From: Takakia lepidozioides
Taxonomy: Eukaryota > Plantae > Bryophyta
Direction: 5' to 3'
Assembly: GCA_030704615.1 (NCBI GenBank)
Contig: CM060731.1
Location: 87,172,001-87,236,000, forward strand
DNA length: 64,000 bases
A model generated the notes under the pieces. That model had not been told where the DNA came from. It did no database searches and saw only the letters and a program-made list of their open reading frames with translations. Positions 5,401 to 14,980 of the stretch are shown here, one piece after another. Within the stretch, counting starts at the first letter, position 1; the number at the start of each line of letters is the position of its first letter. A program made the position numbers and the translations under genes.

Positions 5401-5862
5401 ATTTTTAAGGTTGATTAGGTACTGGCATAATCTTCCATCCAGATGTAGGGGTTGACTACTAGACTTTGCGCAAAATTAGCAAGAGGTGCACCTGCAAAAT
5501 TCTTAACGGAAACGCAATGGCCCTCATTGCTTTGCTGTGTATATCCTTCACACTTCTCGTCCTCTTTGGGTGATTTTCCATTTGTATCGTTCAACCTCGG
5601 CTTGGTCCCTCACCATCAAACACACCTTCAGGGGTTTTTACCTTCTCCCCTCGTAATAAAGTTTTGAGGGCCTCTGTCCCCTCTTCTCAAAAACAATAGG
5701 TCCCACCACCCGACCTACCGTTGGTGCCGCCTCTAGCTCGTCTTTGCAGCAGTCCGTTACTTCGCGGGCAGCTGCCCGCTGAACCATCTTGGCCCGCTCC
5801 CTCTCTCTAACGTCCCTTTCGCGCACACTCCGATTCGGCGCCGCCGCTATGCCTCTATCCAT
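2454..5862 (-). mobile_element. Degenerate Ty3/Gypsy-type gag region (no pol or LTR pair found)
   Basis: Zn knuckle CFLCGEEGHFV*DC (~2775-2825) after an RG-rich tract. Gag-core-like segments (IKQKKRESVED, DCFHTGLRKVFR) are broken by stops and frameshifts. Confidence 0.6.
4077..4610 (-). repeat. ~7 imperfect coding tandem repeats (EEGAGHxxAPSNE-like)
   Basis: Recurring AGGGGC..GTGGCCTGCTCCCTCTT core every ~60-100 bp. Confidence 0.75.
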
Positions 5863-7011
5863 CTGTGTTATAAGCTTTTAATGCAAGTTCCTGTTACCTT
5901 GGCACTTTCAATGATCCCTCGGATTGGACATGCATTGATCGGCTTGCATTATTCCTGAGTAAAGCTTTATGTTGCAGCACAAGTCCTAGAGAGACAGAAC
6001 TAAAGAGAGACACCCAAAATCACCATGCCAGTAGATTAATCTTGTCCTCATTCTGAGAAGTTCCATTAGATCTTTCTGTAAGTGTTCTCCTCTTCCTAAC
6101 CCAGCTGCACCTACTGAACCTGATTGTCTCATTCTGGATTCAAATTTACGTGCACCATACTGTTCTTTGAGGCGTTCACGGTAAACTAAGACATCGGTGT
6201 TGTTTGTCTCCTCATTTATTGAAGTTCACAATACATTTGTTACAAGTTTGTTCACTTGAGGTGCACATCTGCTTTTCCTCCTTTAAGGATATCATCTGTG
6301 ATATCACGGAGCCGGTTGGCAGCAATTCCGGTGCAAGCCCAAGTGTTCTCTGGTTAATTATTCGAGATATCCTTGTTGGTCAGCGCTGATGAGCTGGTGG
6401 GACTGGCTAACGACAAGACTGAAGAGGTGTGGATGGGCCAATTCATACAGACATGCTATGAAAGGTGTGATCGACAGTCTCTTGACTTCCCAATGATTAC
6501 AGGCCATGCAACTACGTGAGAAACCTGAAAATCCCTGTAATGTGAGGCTTATATATTATCTGGTTCAAAGATAAATCGCTCGTGGCCACCGGAGTTCATT
6601 TAGTGATTCGAGAAGGAAATTCAGGTCTAGCTGGACGTTCAAAATTTATGGAGCGGCCTGCTAGCAGTAAGCAAGCGGACTCCGAAGACATTATAAGGCC
6701 ACCCTACGGCAAGGAGAACAGCATCGGACGGGCCGTTTTGAAAGGGTCTGAGATTCTTTGCCCGGTGTCCACAAGCAATGCTGTTGCTATAGGAGAACAG
6801 CCAGAGCTGAGGTACGACCTCGACCGCATCGGCAACCTTCTCCTATTGAAAACTGCAGTGTAGGGATTGACAATATCTGATTCTCGAATGCCATGTTTTT
6901 GCGCGTGAAAACGTTCCCGATCGGATGACACTAGTACACCAGTATAATATCCTCAATCTGACCCTATAGCTCCATTTCGAAAACCATGGTACCCAATGCA
7001 CCAAAATGTAA

Positions 7012-7509
7012 AGCTCGTTTCAGACTAGCGACCGGACAAAACGCCTTGAACAAGTGTTGATACCATGTCATCAATAATCACCGGGCAAACTGTTTGCCAT
7101 AACCAGCGTTTTCAGACTATGTAGCGGACAAGACGACAGAGAGTGGACCAAAACAGACCCCTCGCCACTGCTTGGACCTTACAGATGTTGCATGGTGCCC
7201 AAATTGGATACATGAAATTTGACTACCGTTAGAGACAGGGCCTTGAGGAGAAACAAGCAGATTGATTTGCGGTTCCTGTGAAATTTGGTCTTTGGATACC
7301 ATGGTTGCACACAGTGAAGCAAAAGCTTTCCTACTAGAAGTCTTGGAGGAAGGAAGAGAACGCAGGAGCCGACGGTAGTCTGATTCAGAATTTAGGTTTC
7401 GACGGTGATGAAGTTCGCATTCTTGTCCAGTGGACAAACCGTGTGTGACAACGTGTAGCGGCCAAGCCACGAAATTCAATCTTGTCCGGCCGCTAGTCTG
7501 AAATGGGCC
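7012..7509. mobile_element. MITE, PIF/Harbinger-like
   Basis: 28-bp imperfect TIRs: AGCTCGTTTCAGACTAGCGACCGGACAA (7012) vs reverse complement GGCCCATTTCAGACTAGCGGCCGGACAA (ending 7509). Flanks are TAA / TGA. Confidence 0.6.
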
Positions 7510-7761
7510 TGATCATGTTGTCCCGGGGCATTAGTGCTAGGCTGTCAGCAGGGAGTACAACTGCCTAGTAGGGGTGTATTTAAGCATAACAATGCAGGAA
7601 AATTTATCTCCTGCATGGATCTAATTTCAGATAACTCAAGAAGCTCGTACGGTTTTGGTTTTTCGTCTTGTCCAACGTGCACGGGTTCAGAATGTATAAA
7701 TCTAGCATCTCTTCAGAATTTGCTGTAAGGACTGTGATAACGGAAGCTTCCGTCTTACACG

Positions 7762-10700
7762 ATGCGCACATGCAGGGCTTACAAGCTCGGTAAGCAGAAG
7801 TGCTCCTACAATCAAGTAGAGCTTGTCATAAAAGATGTTGGTGGCGGGAAGATCTCAGAGCTGAAAGTCTCAGAGGCGATTGAGAGCTGTGTGGGAACAG
7901 AGGTGGACGAGAAACTGCGAGAAAGCTGTCTGAAGTTCAACGTGCGCTTTGTTAACAACAACCGCATGCATTTGTACATCTATGTGGTGTATGCAAGTCC
8001 CTATGGCACAACTCGAACTGACAGTCGTGTGATGTATCACTGGATGCCTGTTACACGTTCCAAATGTCGAAAGGGTTGCACTGGTTCGGTCATTAGAGGC
8101 CTTCAGCGGTTTGGGCGAATGCCACGAAGAGGGGCCGGTACATTGGTTCAAGGGGAAGACTCTTGGAAGGAACCCCGTCATTTATACATTGCAATCGATG
8201 AAGCCAGCACACATGTTTGTCCCCGCCATGAGACCTCCAAATTCAGGCTGCTTGTTGCAGCCTATGATGACAAGCAACAACTTCTGGGGACCACAGTCTC
8301 CAGCAGCATTCGTGTTCTTGCAAACAACGATGCGCCTCTGGGAGCTGCGTCGTTCAAGCTCCACTTCAATATTGAAGGTACTCAAACAGGAGTTCTTTGT
8401 ATGACACTTGCATTGTCGATATATCATACAAAAACAGGGGAACTGCACCTGAACACTTTGTTTCGTTATTTACGTACGAATGAATAGCATACGAATTCCC
8501 TGGCATTATAAGATGGAGCATTGTGCATGACCTTACATGGCCAGGAGTCTAGGATCGGAGAATGCTCCAGCTCGTCGCATTCAATTGCTGTGTGAAGTCT
8601 TCAGCATCATAGGTTCTAATTCATGCACATGACAAGTAGTATTTCAGAATTTCCAGTGCCTGAAGCTTGAAATCTATTTACTGAAGATATCGTAGCTGTT
8701 TCTGACTCTTAGACGTTTCCAGAAACTGGCTGTCCACTAATTAGCAGAGGTGAAGGAGAGTCCAGGGCCTTAAATGCTTATATCTGAAATCACTGCCCTT
8801 TCACTCTGGTCAAGAAACTCTCCGTTGTGCAGCGTAAATACTTTAAATTTCTGCTGATAGCAGAAGATGTTTCAGACTTCATAGTCTTTGAGATTGATGG
8901 ATTAGATTTGCAAGACAAATGTGAGAGAGACCACCTTACCACATGTGTCACTTCACCCCACTTGAGGATTTCATTGCTGCATCAAATTGTACATGAAGGA
9001 AAACCTAAACGTTCGATGAGATGCCTAAGTTAGACAAATTATGCACCACATACTTTTTGGTTCCAGATGTAGATCTCATCAATATTTATGTTAATCCTGT
9101 AGGTGGTTGGGGTACTGGAGCTGCTGCATCTCCTTCACCACTCAGAAGTAGCAGAATCCAATTAGGAGTACTTGAGAAGGCTGTCCTCCTCTGCAATCGA
9201 GTACCTCTTCAAGGTAAATTGTCTGTTCAGCTGTCAGAACTCAGCATTTTGTAGAATAACTGTCCTGTCTATCTATAGATCTTGTTCCATATTGACTCTT
9301 TTATAGATTCACCTCAAACGGTCTCAGATATATGAGAGTGAAAACAAGTTTTCAAGATTACACTCCATGCATTTCTCAAACTGCATCAAGCAAGTAAGAA
9401 CTGGAGGTTTTCGGTACCAGAATATAATCATGTTACAAAGTCTCAATTTTCTAATTTCAGTAGGGAAAACCAGATACTGTAGGCACTTGGACAGCAATTG
9501 CATGGAGGCTTCTTGAATGCGTTTCTATCATTCTGCTGCTTTCAACAAGCAAGGAGGTCAAGGACTGTATAATTCTCACTTGTTTAGTTCCTTATAAGCT
9601 AAAATGACACCACTGGACCTCCATGTGATTGCTACCAGTTATCCTCCAGAACAGTCTCAGACCTGCAACAACAGAGGATGGAGTCAAGGTTGATATCTCT
9701 CCATCAACTTACACTGTTCCACCACCGACACGGATGAATGAGCACCACCAAGCCTCTGGAAACAAGGTAGGAATGATAGTAGCTTCCCTGAATAGGACAT
9801 CTTTGAACCTACATATTCTGTCCAGACATTGCAACTACCTTTTTCTTGCCTGTCAGAATTACATTATTCATGGAAAATGTTTATGCAATTCCTACCAGCA
9901 GTTCTATCATTTGAAAGATTAGATAGCACTGCCAGGCAATTTTGTACCTCATAGTTGTGGTGTCTAAAATAGTACAGTCGAAAATATGGGTTGATGTCCA
10001 GCTAATCCACGTGTGCAAGTCCCTGGGTCCAACGAAGTGCTCGACATCCTGACCAATACTTCCAGTTGAACAATGCTAGATGTTAATTGAATATCGTCCA
10101 TCAGCTGTAACACATGGTATTTAGACAAATCCTTAAGCAAATGATAACATCAGACAGGAGTCGATGTATCTACAAAAGTTAATCCAACAATATTTAAACC
10201 AAGTGGTGAACTATTTTAATGGACCGGAGAGCTACAAATCTGGAGCTTGCATTGTTATATTGCTCTTAAATTGCTTGAGATAAGAGGGAAGCGTCCACGC
10301 CCGGGGGTGTCTGGAAAAAAAAACTGTAACAAGCTGATCTTCTCAAGTATCCAGGTCGACAACCAAATGTCATGCATAGACAACCTAACCATTAACTTGG
10401 CTCCTTCAAGAAAGGTAGCTTCCGACATCCAAAAGGAGCACTCTCTTACGCAGCTCTGTGAAAGGTAGGGTCAAAACTTCTCTTTGCACTTGAGGGGTTT
10501 TCTAAAGTTGGATCATATTACCATGATTATCTGGGCAACATAAAACTCTTAAAATCCCGTATACAGTTCCAGGTAGCAATATTGGTGTGGCTTGTTGTTA
10601 GATCTCAAGTCAGAAAGTATAAGTAGAGTTCTCGTGACTGATAACTTGGGAAAGGCTTGGGAAACTGTACTGCCTCATAAATGAAACATGAAGATATCTT

Positions 10701-13700
10701 GACATATTGCAACATAAGTGCAACAAAGCATCTGTTGCACACATAGAGGCAACCCATTCTCAAAAGGATAGGTATTGGCTGGATCAGTTCAGGGTTTATT
10801 TCATCAATTCTGGTAGTAAAGCCACAGCTGGAGGTGCTCAGGCACTTCAATTGCCATGTAGTCCCAGGATGTTATCATCCCAGAAAACATGTCAGTCGAT
10901 GCAATATCATTATCAATTGAGACTGCAATTAGAAACAATCAAGCACATAGTGCTGAGTCTGCACTTGCATTTACAAAATGAGGTGGTTTTAAACTTGCAG
11001 AATTCTGGAAGCATGTGCATTGAAACCAAATCAGGCAGTGGTGTCTTTACGGACTCTAGCAAATGTGGTAGGTGAGTATCTATCACCTCACCATACAGAT
11101 AATATACATAGCTTTGCTGCTGCTGAATCGGAGCCACAAAAGAGCCAGAAAGGATGATGTTTGCAATTATAATTAATCTCTGGCTTGCATCAAACAATCT
11201 GGATCCAAAATAGAATTGCTGTAGCCCTCCAAGACTGCAACAGTGCTCTTTATCTCTCAGGCACAAGAAGGCGGCGCATATCTGAAATTTTCAATGTTCT
11301 CGAGACTGTGCAAGTGGTGCAGCATAAGGGAAAGGAACACTTTATCTGGCTGGGTGGTTGTGAAATTTCGCGTGCACTTGCAAAGCTCTCCAAGGTACGT
11401 CGAGCAGTGAATGAGCAGACCGGTGCCACAGCTGTTCTGAAGTACTTTTTCTAACTGTCAAACAAGATCCACACTCACCTGTGCAGTAACGCAGATGTGA
11501 ATTGGTGAAACGAGAAGACCCCATGTGAGTCATTCATGCTAAGGCATTGCTGTACAATAGCACATGCAAGGGCATGCAAAAGAAACTTCATATGCATATC
11601 TATGCTTTACTTATAGTCTAGTAAATCCTGACCTTCTATATTCCTACCTTGAAGTTTTCATTGCACTTTCAGGAAAAGAGTCATGACATTGGCGATTCAA
11701 CTGTTCACGGTGAAGACATGGAACCTGGGAAAAGTTCAAAGATTAACAATTTAATTGAGCCCCTGGCTGGTCATGGTAAATCCTCACAATATCTTCTTCA
11801 CTCTGCAAAAAACCGTCACAATTCCTATCTAAGAGAATAAAACAATCAAACTTTCTTGCAGCCAAGACCCTTAAGTTGGGGAGCAGCATATTGCTCTTTG
11901 GAACTAGAATTGATGAGATTTGCTGATGTCTGAACTGATTTTGACATGTCACAGGTTCTGGGACATTTGACAATTCTATTGGTGTTCTTAGCAGAAAGCT
12001 TATACAGCTCTTTCTGGTTGATGTGGTAAGAGCCTTGCCACCAACGCAACACCTGTGGTCCAGACAGAGAGCATTTTTGCAAGTCTTCAACCTAGGTCTT
12101 CTGTTAAGGAATTGGTACCGCCTAATCCTAAATGTTTCTCTCATTATGCTATCGTGAATTTGTTGTCTGCTCTCATTCCTAACTCTCTGCATGTGGATGC
12201 AGCGATGCCCTGTGGCCTGGGATAATGTCATCACCACTCTCCTTAATAGCCACCAAAACGACCCTCAGGCTTTTCGATGTGAGTAAAATACTGAGATGGG
12301 ATGCACTGTCTGATGTAGGAGGACCAGTAAAGGCAGTCATACATTCTTTGGTTGGTTTCTGCCTTGGTGCAGGATGTGGGCCCTATGTGACCATGGTGTT
12401 TCTATGCTGCTAGTAACTGTTACCTGATTCCTTGGCAGCAAAAGGAAGGAGGCTATGTGAGATTGCAAGAATCTTCTCCGCCATGCACCTGGTGAAGAAA
12501 GTCACACACCATAAGTTCCCTGCATCCACCTTCTATGAGTGGCTTGGAGACAAAGGGGTCATGGAGCATCTTAATAGCTTGGCAGGCAAGTAGGCAGTAG
12601 ATTGCCTGACCCTGTGTGAGCTTCAAACTTGATATGTCCTGTCCAGAAACTTCTGCGGCTATGAAACTGTGACGATCCTTGTGTTCTGCTAACTAGTTTC
12701 TATTGGTAGCTCAATCTTAAAAAATATCGTCTTGTGAGTGAGAGTATTCTAGACAGAAGGATGAGAGGAGGAAGGCAGCTGACCACCATGGAGGACTTGG
12801 TAGCACCTGCAAATTAGTAGTGACAGTACGCTAGGAGTAATCTCTGTGTTGTGCAGTGATTCCACCTGTCTTCTGGATACATGAATAAATTTTGAAACAA
12901 AAAGACAGGTTTTGATAGCAATACTCATCGTCTTTTCACTTGCCTGTTCAGTTCCTGGAAAGCAGAATGGAGCCCGTCCAAGAACACACGTCTCAAGGTC
13001 AACGAAATCTCCAAATGCAGAAGGAGGACGAAACTCAATATCTGAGTCCAACACACACCATCGTGATGCCTCAACTAATGGCAATAGCTTGGTTTGCTGC
13101 TCCCTGCCAGTGAAAGTCCCGCGGCCTTCTGGTCATTCTGAAAGCCAGAACCTACTCCCAAGGCAATCCAGAAGAAAGTTCTCTGACCTTACAGGAGAGG
13201 ATGATGCACCTTTCTACGCAAAACTATATGGCTTGCACGGGGCTGGGCATACAGAGCACAGAGATAATCATGTGCCTAAACGGCCCCGGATGGCTCTAGG
13301 CAGCTCCATGGGCACAAACCTCTCCTACAAATTTCAAGACGGTTGCACAAATAGCGCAGTGATCAATGATGCTCATGCAATGTGCCATTTGTCATTATCT
13401 GATCATATGCGGGGCCAGATTTCATCCCAATTGGAAGTCTCCACTACACAAACCCCAGATTGGCAGAAAGCAGGCCCACAGAGAGAGAGCTCTCAAGGAA
13501 AGGAGACTAAAGTAGGTTCCTGTTCTACACCTAGAAGCCATGGCAACACCCTACCAGAAATCAATCTGTTTCCAGTCAACTCAGGGGCCATCCATTTGGC
13601 AGAATGGGGGAGCTCCAATCCAATGAGGAGGGATGTACATACAGCAGCAATTACTGTTGATGATCAGATTCAAGATACTCCAAAGGCTGCTGATGATTCA

Positions 13701-14980
13701 GAGGGAGGAGGGAAGTTGTCTGACTCGCCATTTGAGCAGTGTATGAGCTCACCAGCCACTACCAGTAATGGAGGGGGAGGGGCTCCAAGCGCTGAGCTGG
13801 CCCTGAACAGTATAAGCTCACAAACTGTTCAAACGGGTTCAGGCCCAACTGTATTCCAATTTCCATATAAGAAAAGACCACACAATTGGGATGCGTTTCT
13901 TCGACTAGCAGCTCCAGGGTGCCGCAACAACTCCCTTATGTCACAATGTGATACAAGACAGGACCTCATTGATGGAAACAATGGAAATCAGCTACCTTGT
14001 TTCAACCCTTTTTACTATCTCCAGCAGCTCTTCACGCCGCAGCAAGTGGAGCAATTTAAATCTCAGAATCCAGGTATATGAATCTAGAAACACAGCAAAG
14101 AAAGAAACTTTACTACGTCCATGAAAAGCCCACCCAAGAGAAAGAGAAGAAGGGAAGAATGCGAATGGAGATAGTGTCCACAGAAAAGAAAGGGAAGGAA
14201 AGGAATTTCACAGATAGTATACAGGACAAAATTGCAAACAGAGAGTGAGCGGAGGAAATGAAGAAAGGAAGGAGTTTATTACGTCCAAGAGAGAGAAATG
14301 AAATGAAATGAAACGGTATGTCCAAGAGATTTCTGAGTTAAGTCGATAGTGTGGAGGGCGGACAGCCAAAACCAGAAATAGAAACTGGCATGAAACCGAT
14401 GAGCCTGTTTATGTGGAAAACTGCTAACATCTGAGAGTGATGACCACTGTAGTTTGAAACTAGACGCCTGAAGAATTTCTTAAGAAGACGTCACTTTATG
14501 TTTTGTTTGCAGTACACACACATACTGGGCATTTTGATTTACTTTTGTTACCAGACTGATTCTGGTTTGAGTCTAACTAGAAAAGACTTGTGCATGGATG
14601 CAGCATTCCTGTTCCAGTATGTACACCATTCAAGGGTACTTTATCACGAATTATGCACACAAGCAGCAAACAAAGGTGGTAGCATTGACCGACCTGTGGT
14701 GCGTCCAGTAGCTACACATGGCTGTGTCAATCTGACCACAGACCATTGTCCCTATCTCCCTGACCAAGGCCCCTTGCCTTCATCCCCACTCTGTCCAGAT
14801 CCTCCAACACTTGACCAGCTCTTGAGTCCATTTTCACAAGGCGGGCTTTGGATGAGGAAACACTGCACACAGCAGAGGGAGCCTTCGGAGAGCTGCCCTA
14901 GCAGAGACCCCACCCGCTTGATTGAGTTGGAATCTGCAGGGGTTTTGGAAGGTGGTCACCAGTGTTGGGTGGTTATTTGA
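7762..14980 (+). CDS. Atypical E2F (DEL/E2F7-8-like) transcription factor: two winged-helix domains plus an extra uncharacterised N-terminal domain
   Basis: Phase-consistent, stop-free exon chain: 7762-8377, 9103-9213, 9639-9766, 10355-10464, 11001-11071, 11261-11394, 11673-11775, 11955-12025, 12203-12278, 12439-12585 (GC donor), 12952-14073, and probably 14604-14980 (otherwise stop at 14081). DBD1: KEHSLTQLCER-ILE...VVG-TRRRRISEIFNVLETV...FIWLG. DBD2: NSIGVLSRKLIQLFL...KGRRLCEIARIFSAMHLVKK...YEWLG. Both parallel DEL KSLGLL / RRIYDIVNVLE / RRLYDIANVL. Confidence 0.8.

What the first reader, a model, noticed from the sequence alone, without database searches (positions are those of the whole stretch)
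7762..14980. Chimeric transcription factor: unknown N-terminal domain fused to tandem atypical-E2F winged helices
Seen: a stop-free, phase-consistent 11-12-exon model that the ORF track does not show as one gene. Established: DEL/E2F7/8 proteins have two E2F DBDs and only a short N-terminus. Here exon 1 adds a ~205-aa globular domain with Cys/His clusters (KCRKGC, THVCPRH), ending KFRLLV...VSSSIRVLAN. Inference: that ending resembles the last strands of p53/NDT80/STAT/CudA/CBP60-type beta-sandwich DNA-binding folds, implying a three-DBD regulator that I do not recognise as described.
Basis: partly seen in the sequence, partly recalled or inferred. Interest (0 to 1): 0.82.

Follow-up and report, generated by a model that had tools for sequence, protein, structure and literature searches.

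The report
Plant DEL-type E2F with extra beta-sandwich domain
This is a real 13-exon plant gene for an uncharacterised transcription factor that joins a beta-sandwich domain shaped like the EBF/p53 DNA-binding folds to the two winged helices of an atypical (DEL/E2F7/8-type) E2F. The combination is conserved from streptophyte algae to a conifer, but I found no paper that describes it.

Summary
One stop-free, phase-consistent gene joins the N-terminal domain to two E2F winged helices. It has 13 exons and starts at ATG 6648, not at 7762.

Annotated models with the same architecture exist in Physcomitrium, Sphagnum, Calypogeia, Riccia, Diphasiastrum, Adiantum, Cryptomeria, Mesotaenium, Closterium and Chara. 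All are labelled hypothetical or uncharacterised. One 4.9-kb public contig carries all three domains in a single ORF.

With a 50-sequence alignment the N-domain folds well (pLDDT 86.8) as a beta-sandwich. Its best solved match is the EBF1 DNA-binding domain (Z 8.3). CP2/Grainyhead, p53 and Rel follow at Z 4-5. A language-model search places it beside Pfam DG1062_N. The domain also occurs without E2F in green algae.

The winged helices match human E2F8 best, in the same order. Algal members keep the RRxYD DNA-reading motif. Land-plant members, this one included, have lost it (RRISE and RRLCE).

DNA binding by the N-domain is inferred, not shown. No RNA reads could be obtained, and the joined protein was never searched or folded. 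I rate it a new variant of a known kind, of moderate interest.

The parts
6648..6811 (+). ATG at 6648, 54 codons plus 2 nt, donor GTACGA. It carries a KEN motif (6711-6719) and the start of the conserved N-domain (LCPVSTS...EQPEL, from 6756).
   Evidence: tblastn of ten homologues ends at 6812 and continues at 7774. Sequence read. Phases checked. KEN conservation shown.
7776..8377 (+). Exon 2, the body of the N-terminal beta-sandwich domain (about 200 aa). Acceptor AG at 7774-7775, donor GTACTC. The invariant residues include C (8065-8067), C (8077-8079) and H (8212-8214), and the ending is IRVLANNDAPLGAA.
   Evidence: 85-89% identity to homologues. 357 profile hits. AlphaFold pLDDT 86.8. EBF1 DBD at Z 8.3. 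Invariant columns listed.
9103..9213 (+). Exon 3, linker (GGWG...PLQ). An in-phase alternative acceptor would start the exon at 9067.
   Evidence: Collinear tblastn block 9030-9224. The junction ...NIE/GGWG matches ...NIKGGWG and ...NLKGGWG in P0016 and P0017. Phases checked.
9639..9766 (+). Exon 4, a poorly conserved linker of 128 nt. It restores the reading phase between exons 3 and 5.
   Evidence: It is the canonical AG/GT pair that I found to fit the phases. The junction PLQ/V-ILQNS matches PLQD-IMQNN in P0017. I did not enumerate alternative exon chains, and there was no tblastn hit, so this is the weakest exon.
10355..10464 (+). Exon 5, the end of the linker and the start of winged helix 1 (...EHSLTQLCE).
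   Evidence: tblastn block 10352-10465. It matches the SLxxLCERL start of E2F_TDP in homologues. Phases checked.
11001..11071 (+). Exon 6, the middle of winged helix 1.
   Evidence: tblastn block 10996-11085. Phases checked.
11261..11394 (+). Exon 7, the recognition helix and wing of winged helix 1. The motif is RRRISE (11269-11286) where E2Fs have RRIYD.
   Evidence: Pfam E2F_TDP E 1.8e-8, 34.4 bits, above the cut-off of 25.7. Best PDB match is E2F8 4yo2 DBD1.
11673..11775 (+). Exon 8, the linker between the winged helices.
   Evidence: Canonical splice sites and phase. Not conserved in tblastn.
11955..12025 (+). Exon 9, the start of winged helix 2 (LSRKLIQLFLVDV, the SQKFxxLFLV motif of E2F7/8).
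   Evidence: The equivalent stretch of P0017 aligns to E2F8 DBD2. Motif listed across members. Phases checked.
12203..12278 (+). Exon 10, the middle of winged helix 2. Donor GTGAGT.
   Evidence: tblastn block 12167-12283. Phases checked.
12439..12589 (+). Exon 11, the recognition helix and wing of winged helix 2. The motif is GRRLCE (12444-12461) where E2Fs have RRLYD. The exon ends either at 12585 (GC donor, CAG|GCAAGT) or at 12589 (GT donor).
   Evidence: Pfam E2F_TDP E 0.009. The only PDB match is E2F8 DBD2, and it is weak. tblastn gives 64% identity. Both endings keep the frame.
12905..14073 (+). Exon 12, a long low-complexity region that ends in the conserved motif ...NPFYYLQQLFTPQQVEQFKSQNP. 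It starts at 12952 (strong acceptor, paired with the GC donor) or at 12905 (weak acceptor, paired with the GT donor).
   Evidence: tblastn E 5e-50, with similarity starting near 12957. The C-terminal motif is shared with P0017, P0019, P0025 and P0244.
14604..14980 (+). Exon 13, the conserved C-terminal region (AFLFQYVHHSRVLYHELC...). Stop TGA at 14978-14980.
   Evidence: tblastn E 9e-31. In the Physcomitrium models it follows exon 12 without a gap. The junction NP/A-F matches HNPAF in P0017.

Best explanation
Window 6648-14980 (+) is one 13-exon gene for a transcription factor of about 1071 aa. It belongs to a streptophyte subfamily of atypical (DEL/E2F7/8-type) E2Fs that carries an extra N-terminal beta-sandwich domain.

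Shown here:
- The exon chain is stop-free and phase-consistent.
- The three-part architecture is conserved from streptophyte algae to a conifer.
- The two winged helices match E2F8 in the same order.
- The N-domain is an ancient module. Outside streptophytes it occurs without E2F domains.
- It is confidently predicted as a beta-sandwich, and its nearest solved structure is the EBF1 DNA-binding domain.

Inferred mechanism:
- As in E2F8, the two winged helices probably pack into an intramolecular pseudo-heterodimer, so the protein binds DNA as a monomer without DP.
- It lacks the dimerisation, marked-box and pocket-binding parts, so it probably acts as an RB-independent regulator, most likely a repressor.
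- The N-domain, with its invariant C-x3-C...H cluster and basic loops, most likely adds a further DNA contact.
- In land plants both recognition helices have lost the Y and D of RRxYD. Target choice has therefore probably shifted away from the classical E2F site, possibly towards the N-domain.
- The N-terminal KEN motif suggests APC/C-dependent turnover, as reported for E2F8.
For: Gene model:
- All 12 introns have AG acceptors. Eleven have GT donors, and the twelfth has either GT or a consensus GC donor. There are 3216 nt and no internal stop.
- The exon blocks are collinear in three related genomes.

Architecture:
- Pfam E2F_TDP is found in full-length homologues that also hold the N-domain.
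- L006 is a 4930-nt contig with one 1427-aa ORF that holds all three domains.
- On the N-domain tree all nine fused members lie on one side of a branch with 97/96 support.

Fold:
- pLDDT 86.8 and pTM 0.84.
- EBF1 DBD scores Z 8.3 over 140 residues, against 5.7 for the next chain. CP2c, Cep-1/p53, Grhl2, VelB, RelA and TonEBP score Z 4-4.8. The first, poorer model gave the same ranking.
- The language-model neighbours are DG1062_N, LAG1, P53, SPT23_MGA2_DBD and COE1_DBD.

E2F type:
- E2F8 (4yo2) is the best PDB match for both helices, in order.
- RRxYD is intact in the algal members and degenerate in the land-plant members.

KEN:
- The motif is conserved in moss, liverwort, lycophyte, fern and conifer members.
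- E2F8 has a KEN box at position 5 that contributes to APC/C-Cdh1 degradation (PMC7185961).
Against: - There is no RNA evidence from this genome. Exons 4 and 8 rest on splice sites and phase only, and intron 11 has two possible solutions.
- The fold match is middling. Z 8.3 is about the typical best score the tool reports for models without a clear relative. Foldseek finds nothing at E<=1e-3 for either model. For the better model the EBF1 probability is only 0.69.
- There is no sequence-level link to COE, p53 or any other DBD family.
- Beta-sandwiches also serve protein-protein contacts.
- With RRxYD degenerate, the winged helices may bind DNA weakly or not at all.
- KEN is only three residues. 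It is absent from the algal, Calypogeia and Sphagnum models.
Confidence: 0.72

Rival explanations
1. The gene and its architecture are as described, but the N-terminal beta-sandwich does not bind DNA. It would instead be a protein-protein, oligomerisation or ligand-binding module (Ig/TIG-like) that recruits partners to a DEL-type factor.
For: - Many non-DNA-binding sandwiches (pilotins, pilins, transthyretin-like domains, CBMs) score Z 4-5, next to p53 and Rel.
- Foldseek gives no significant match.
- No sequence or profile hit to any DBD family.
Against: - The single match that stands out is a DNA-binding domain (EBF1, Z 8.3 to 8.9 against 5.4 to 5.7 for the next chain).
- The language-model neighbours that carry a Pfam family are DG1062_N followed by DNA-binding sandwiches (LAG1, P53, SPT23/MGA2, COE).
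- The domain sits at the N-terminus of proteins with no other recognisable domain in chlorophytes. That fits a self-sufficient targeting module.
- It has invariant basic residues and a Cys/His cluster.
Confidence: 0.3
2. There are two neighbouring genes: one for a small N-domain protein (exons 1-2, perhaps 3-4) and one for a separate DEL gene. Automatic gene models would have fused them by mistake.
For: - No RNA evidence from this genome.
- Many public gene calls stop after exon 2 (P0001-P0009).
- The Selaginella models hold the N-domain without E2F.
- The linker exons 4 and 8 are poorly conserved.
Against: - The short calls run on into intron sequence and then stop.
- The phases are consistent across all 12 introns, and there is no stop or new start between the parts.
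- The order and strand are the same in every streptophyte examined. More than ten independent annotations include RefSeq isoforms of Physcomitrium and Cryptomeria.
- One uninterrupted 1427-aa ORF holds all parts on a 4.9-kb contig.
- The Selaginella protein also carries the C-terminal motif of the long gene. That points to internal loss or a skipped region, not to a separate gene.
Confidence: 0.05
3. The locus is a decaying or transposon-derived chimera (pseudogene) rather than a working gene.
For: - The genome is rich in transposons, according to earlier notes near the window.
- The RRxYD motifs are degenerate.
Against: - There is no internal stop or frameshift over 3.2 kb of coding sequence.
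- Identity in the N-domain is 85-89% with other bryophytes, while the introns are not conserved.
- The same RRxYD changes, including the conserved D-to-E change, are shared by all land-plant members. This points to a maintained, altered function rather than decay.
Confidence: 0.02

Closest known systems
Atypical E2Fs: plant DEL1-3 (E2Fd/e/f) and animal E2F7/E2F8
   Same: - Two E2F_TDP winged helices in tandem.
- E2F8 (4yo2) is the best solved match for both, in the same order, including the SQKFxxLFLV lead-in of DBD2.
- No marked-box or dimerisation domain and no pocket-binding domain was detected.
- An N-terminal KEN motif, as in E2F8 (PMC7185961).
- Algal members keep RRxYD in both helices.
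   Different: - It carries an N-terminal beta-sandwich domain of about 220 aa. From general knowledge, DEL and E2F7/8 lack this.
- In land-plant members, this one included, RRxYD is replaced by RRISE and RRLCE.
- It has a long C-terminal region with its own conserved motif.
- A word-based search with the E2F region of the Riccia member found only the query itself, so the region is strongly diverged.
EBF/COE DNA-binding domain (Pfam COE1_DBD; PDB 3mln, 3mlp)
   Same: - It is the best structural match to the N-domain: Z 8.3, 140 residues aligned, rmsd 3.8, well above the next chain.
- COE1_DBD is among the language-model neighbours.
- Both are beta-sandwiches with a Cys/His cluster.
   Different: - Only 8% identity, and no Pfam or profile hit.
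- From general knowledge, the COE zinc knuckle is H-x3-C-x2-C-x5-C. Here the invariant residues are C-x3-C and a distant H.
- No IPT/TIG or HLH domains follow.
Pfam DG1062_N (PF28397)
   Same: The nearest clusters by language-model features (0.91 and 0.90, sharing 187 and 185 of 256 features) carry this label. They are eukaryotic, from haptophytes and oomycetes.
   Different: - The local Pfam copy does not hold this model, so membership could not be scored.
- No function is attached to the name, and no paper in the library mentions it.
- The labelled clusters are short proteins without E2F domains.
p53 / CP2-Grainyhead / Rel-type DNA-binding beta-sandwiches
   Same: The same general class of fold appears at Z 4-4.8 (Cep-1, p53, CP2c/LSF, Grhl2, RelA, TonEBP, VelB).
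   Different: These scores are no higher than those of unrelated sandwiches. There is no sequence similarity.

Membership tests
Atypical E2F (DEL / E2F7 / E2F8) | Two E2F_TDP winged-helix domains in tandem in one polypeptide | tested here: met
   - DBD1 scores 34.4 bits against a cut-off of 25.7 on exon 7 alone. DBD2 scores 16.1 bits on exon 11 alone.
- Both domains of E2F8 4yo2 align in order to the homologue P0017 and to the window exons.
- Pfam reports two stretches in P0019, P0021, P0022 and P0023.
Atypical E2F (DEL / E2F7 / E2F8) | RRxYD DNA-recognition motif in both winged helices | tested here: not met
   The window has RRISE (DBD1) and RRLCE (DBD2). All land-plant members are similarly degenerate. 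The algal members Mesotaenium, Chara (DBD2) and P0049 keep RRVYD and RRLYD.
Atypical E2F (DEL / E2F7 / E2F8) | No DP-dimerisation or marked-box domain and no pocket-protein binding domain | tested here: met
   No Pfam family other than E2F_TDP is found in the window ORFs or in ten full-length homologues. Absence by HMM is weak evidence for short motifs.
Atypical E2F (DEL / E2F7 / E2F8) | DP-independent binding to the E2F site (TTTSSCGC) and repression of E2F targets | not testable with these tools
   This needs EMSA, DAP-seq and reporter assays.
Pfam DG1062_N (PF28397) | Score above the family's gathering threshold | tested here: inconclusive
   The model is not in the local Pfam copy (no hit). 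The only link is language-model proximity, at 0.91 and 0.90.
COE/EBF DNA-binding domain | Sequence match to COE1_DBD, including the H-x3-C-x2-C-x5-C zinc knuckle | tested here: not met
   None of 50 members hits COE1_DBD even at E<=10. A profile search of PDB does not find EBF1. The invariant residues are C-x3-C plus a distant H. The resemblance is structural only, at Z 8.3.
   No Pfam hit. p53 and Cep-1 reach only Z 4-4.7. NDT80, STAT and CBP60 are not among the 50 best chains.

The most novel reading that the evidence does not exclude
The N-terminal domain would be a previously unrecognised class of sequence-specific DNA-binding domain. It would be a distant structural cousin of EBF/COE and would be spread through green algae, streptophytes and other protists. 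In land plants this DEL-type factor would have given up classical E2F-site reading (RRxYD lost in both helices) and handed target choice to that domain. That would create a cell-cycle-linked regulator with a new DNA code, one that seed-free plants and at least one conifer keep and that flowering plants appear to lack.
Probability: 0.3. Interest if true: 0.75.

Novelty: new variant of a known kind. Interest (0 to 1): 0.55.

Why it matters
E2F/DP/DEL factors sit at the core of cell-cycle and endocycle control, and plant work on them rests almost wholly on flowering plants.

- This gene shows that bryophytes, lycophytes, ferns, a conifer and streptophyte algae keep a DEL-type protein with an extra, ancient beta-sandwich module.
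- The land-plant copies have rewritten the residues that read the E2F site.
- Counts of 'DEL' genes made with the E2F Pfam model alone (for example the two DELs reported for Marchantia in PMC13237563) may include members of this subfamily without noticing the added domain. I did not check this.
- The N-domain is also the only recognisable part of a family of uncharacterised proteins in green algae. Showing that it binds DNA would define a new transcription-factor family.
- Orthologues exist in Physcomitrium, and probably in Marchantia, where knock-outs are routine.

Tried and rejected
There is therefore no read-level test of splicing.
- Joined protein. Exons were searched by reference. In the script each exon was translated on its own and the split codons were handled one by one. 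The fold covers exon 2 only (window 7774-8376) and lacks the roughly 18 residues of exon 1.
- Local Pfam gives no family for the N-domain, even at E<=10 over 50 members.
- phmmer and a profile search against PDB sequences found no relative of the N-domain.
- Foldseek against PDB gave nothing at E<=1e-3 for either model.
- The Atlas shape search found only the family's own chlorophyte cluster at TM 0.51, and LAG1/CSL at TM 0.38.
- A word-based search with the E2F region of the Riccia member returned only the query. No canonical DEL sequences were obtained, so I could not build a tree placing this subfamily relative to DEL1-3 and E2F7/8.
- The C-terminal conserved motif has no Pfam hit and no usable Atlas hit.
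- Literature. Searches for DG1062, PF28397, CudA, atypical E2F/DEL in bryophytes and related terms found no description of this architecture. One call failed on a term with a slash.
- E2F-site scan. TTTSSCGS occurs 9 times against 10.4 expected in the window, so there is no enrichment.
- Rejected: the ATG at 7762 as the start codon, because it lies in intron 1.
- Rejected: the acceptor giving an exon 3 start at 9067, because 9103 fits the homologues better.
- Rejected: acceptors at 12907-8, 12961-2 and 12964-5 for exon 12, because they are out of frame with both candidate donors.
Full report
**What is in the sequence**

The ORF 7762-8487 on the + strand exists and holds the quoted Cys/His clusters and the IRVLANND ending. 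Downstream on the same strand, Pfam finds E2F_TDP in ORF 11185-11454 (E 1.8e-8, 34.4 bits, cut-off 25.7). It finds the family more weakly in ORF 12432-12593 (E 0.009). The region has the look of an intron-rich plant gene, with 39-49% G+C.

**Gene model**

I compared all stop-free + strand segments with three related genomic contigs (L001/L002, 87% identical in the N-domain; L003, 70%). Only discrete, collinear blocks matched, with E values from 1e-123 to 1e-4.

Residues of about 5-57 of ten proteins match 6648-6812 and continue without a gap at 7774. Reading the DNA gives these features:

- an ATG at 6648;
- a donor AG|GTACGA after 6811;
- an acceptor AG at 7774-7775.

The ATG at 7762 is therefore intronic. 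One public contig (L004) has exons 1 and 2 already joined.

The full chain has 13 exons:

| Exon | Coordinates |
|---|---|
| 1 | 6648-6811 |
| 2 | 7776-8377 |
| 3 | 9103-9213 |
| 4 | 9639-9766 |
| 5 | 10355-10464 |
| 6 | 11001-11071 |
| 7 | 11261-11394 |
| 8 | 11673-11775 |
| 9 | 11955-12025 |
| 10 | 12203-12278 |
| 11 | 12439-12585 |
| 12 | 12952-14073 |
| 13 | 14604-14980 |

The chain is 3216 nt, or 1071 codons plus the stop, with no internal stop. Eleven introns are GT-AG.

Intron 11 has two possible solutions. One is a consensus GC donor (CAG|GCAAGT) with a strong acceptor. The other is a GT donor at 12590 with a weak acceptor at 12904, which gives 1088 aa. Both keep the frame.

Exons 4 and 8 rest on splice sites, phase and short junction matches only.

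Each exon was translated separately.

**One gene or two?**

The indirect evidence is strong.

A profile of the N-domain found 357 proteins in 1.8 billion representatives. Among the long ones, E2F_TDP is the only recurrent Pfam family. The proteins that carry both parts are independent annotations from:

- Physcomitrium patens (isoforms of 977 and 1000 aa);
- Sphagnum magellanicum;
- Calypogeia fissa;
- Riccia fluitans;
- Diphasiastrum complanatum;
- Adiantum nelumboides;
- Cryptomeria japonica (RefSeq);
- Mesotaenium;
- Closterium;
- Chara braunii.

The Physcomitrium models cover exon 1 through exon 13 of the window. A 4930-nt public contig holds one 1427-aa ORF with the N-domain and both winged helices. 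The many short gene calls (P0001-P0009) simply read on into intron 2.

**The N-terminal domain**

The local Pfam copy, PDB sequences and a profile against PDB give nothing.

A language-model search puts the domain next to clusters labelled DG1062_N (PF28397; scores 0.91 and 0.90). After those come LAG1, P53, SPT23/MGA2 and COE DNA-binding domains.

With nine sequences the AlphaFold model was mediocre (pLDDT 70). With 50 diverse sequences it is good (pLDDT 86.8, pTM 0.84) and almost entirely beta strand.

An exhaustive structural comparison gave the EBF1 DNA-binding domain as the one match that stands out. It scored Z 8.3 over 140 residues at rmsd 3.8, against Z 5.7 for the next chain. CP2c/LSF, Cep-1/p53, Grhl2, VelB, RelA and TonEBP follow at Z 4-4.8, mixed with unrelated sandwiches.

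Foldseek is not significant for either model. The tool itself warns that Z near 8 can be a common arrangement.

The invariant positions include W, R, C-x3-C, K, DE, H, R, N, P and G. The Cys/Cys/His trio suggests a metal site. That is inference only, and I could not inspect the model's geometry.

**Distribution**

The domain occurs without detectable E2F domains in chlorophytes (Ostreococcus, Chlorella, Micractinium, Myrmecia, Trebouxia, Apatococcus, Botryococcus, Auxenochlorella, a pedinophyte) and in many unnamed marine sequences. The clusters nearest by language model are from haptophytes and oomycetes.

All E2F-bearing members are streptophytes, apart from the unidentified P0049. On a maximum-likelihood tree of the N-domain they all lie on one side of a branch with 97/96 support. 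This fits a single fusion. No angiosperm appeared among the named hits. That suggests loss but does not prove it.

**The E2F part**

Human E2F8 (4yo2) is the best solved match, ahead of E2F4. DBD1 aligns to DBD1 and DBD2 to DBD2, including the SQKFxxLFLV lead-in. No marked-box or pocket-binding domain is detected. This is the atypical, DP-independent layout.

The DNA-reading motif RRxYD is intact in the algal members: RRVYD and RRLYD in Mesotaenium and P0049, and RRLYD in Chara. It is degenerate in every land-plant member. The window has RRISE and RRLCE. D is replaced by E throughout, except in DBD2 of Riccia fluitans, and Y is variable. One defining feature of the family is therefore tested and not met here. 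The protein is laid out like a DEL but may not read the classical site.

**Other features**

- Exon 1 holds a KEN motif (6711-6719). It is conserved in moss, liverwort, lycophyte, fern and conifer members. E2F8 has an N-terminal KEN box that contributes to APC/C-Cdh1 degradation (PMC7185961). A similar role here is only a hypothesis.
- A C-terminal motif spanning exons 12 and 13 is conserved to Cryptomeria and Selaginella but matches nothing known.

**Known or new?**

Orthologous sequences are public but labelled hypothetical or uncharacterised. The domain apparently has a Pfam name without a function. The library holds no paper on the architecture.

[quoted passage not shown] I rate this a new variant of a known kind, of moderate interest. 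The gene and its architecture are solid. DNA binding by the N-domain and the shift of specificity are testable inferences.

Noticed in passing
window 6711-6719 (exon 1): A KEN tripeptide within GKENSIG is conserved in the Physcomitrium, Diphasiastrum, Cryptomeria, Riccia fluitans and Adiantum members. It is absent from the algal, Calypogeia and Sphagnum models. It may be an APC/C degron like the KEN box at position 5 of human E2F8.
   Followed up: partly
window 12586-12951 (intron 11): This may be a GC-AG intron. The donor CAG|GCAAGT at 12586 pairs in frame with the strong acceptor at 12950-12951. The GT donor four bases later fits only a weak acceptor at 12903-12904.
   Followed up: partly
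window 13998-14073 and 14604-14660: A conserved C-terminal motif (NPFYYLQQLFTPQQ...NP/AF...Y..LC) is split by the last intron. It is shared with the Cryptomeria, Diphasiastrum, Physcomitrium and Selaginella proteins. It has no Pfam or Atlas match.
   Followed up: partly
P0025 / P0189 (Selaginella moellendorffii, 384 and 387 aa): These models hold the N-domain and the C-terminal motif but no E2F winged helices. Either the middle part was lost in this lineage or the annotation skipped it.
   Followed up: no
window 5817-5824: A single E2F-type site, TTTCGCGC, lies about 830 bases upstream of the ATG at 6648. The motif is not enriched in the window (9 found, 10.4 expected), so this may be chance.
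   Followed up: partly
window 14080-14330 (intron 12): A purine-rich stretch rich in GAA and GGA repeats, visible when reading the sequence. The 14000-14499 bin has AT skew 0.31 and GC skew 0.19.
   Followed up: no
window 11743-12237 (- strand): A 164-aa ORF on the opposite strand overlaps intron 8, exon 9, intron 9 and the start of exon 10. It was not examined and is probably a chance ORF.
   Followed up: no
L006 (Logan ERR12684112 contig, 4930 nt): An unidentified organism carries the longest family member (1427 aa) as one uninterrupted ORF, with canonical RRVYD and RRLYD motifs. On the N-domain tree it groups with the Closterium and Mesotaenium members, on a long branch.
   Followed up: partly
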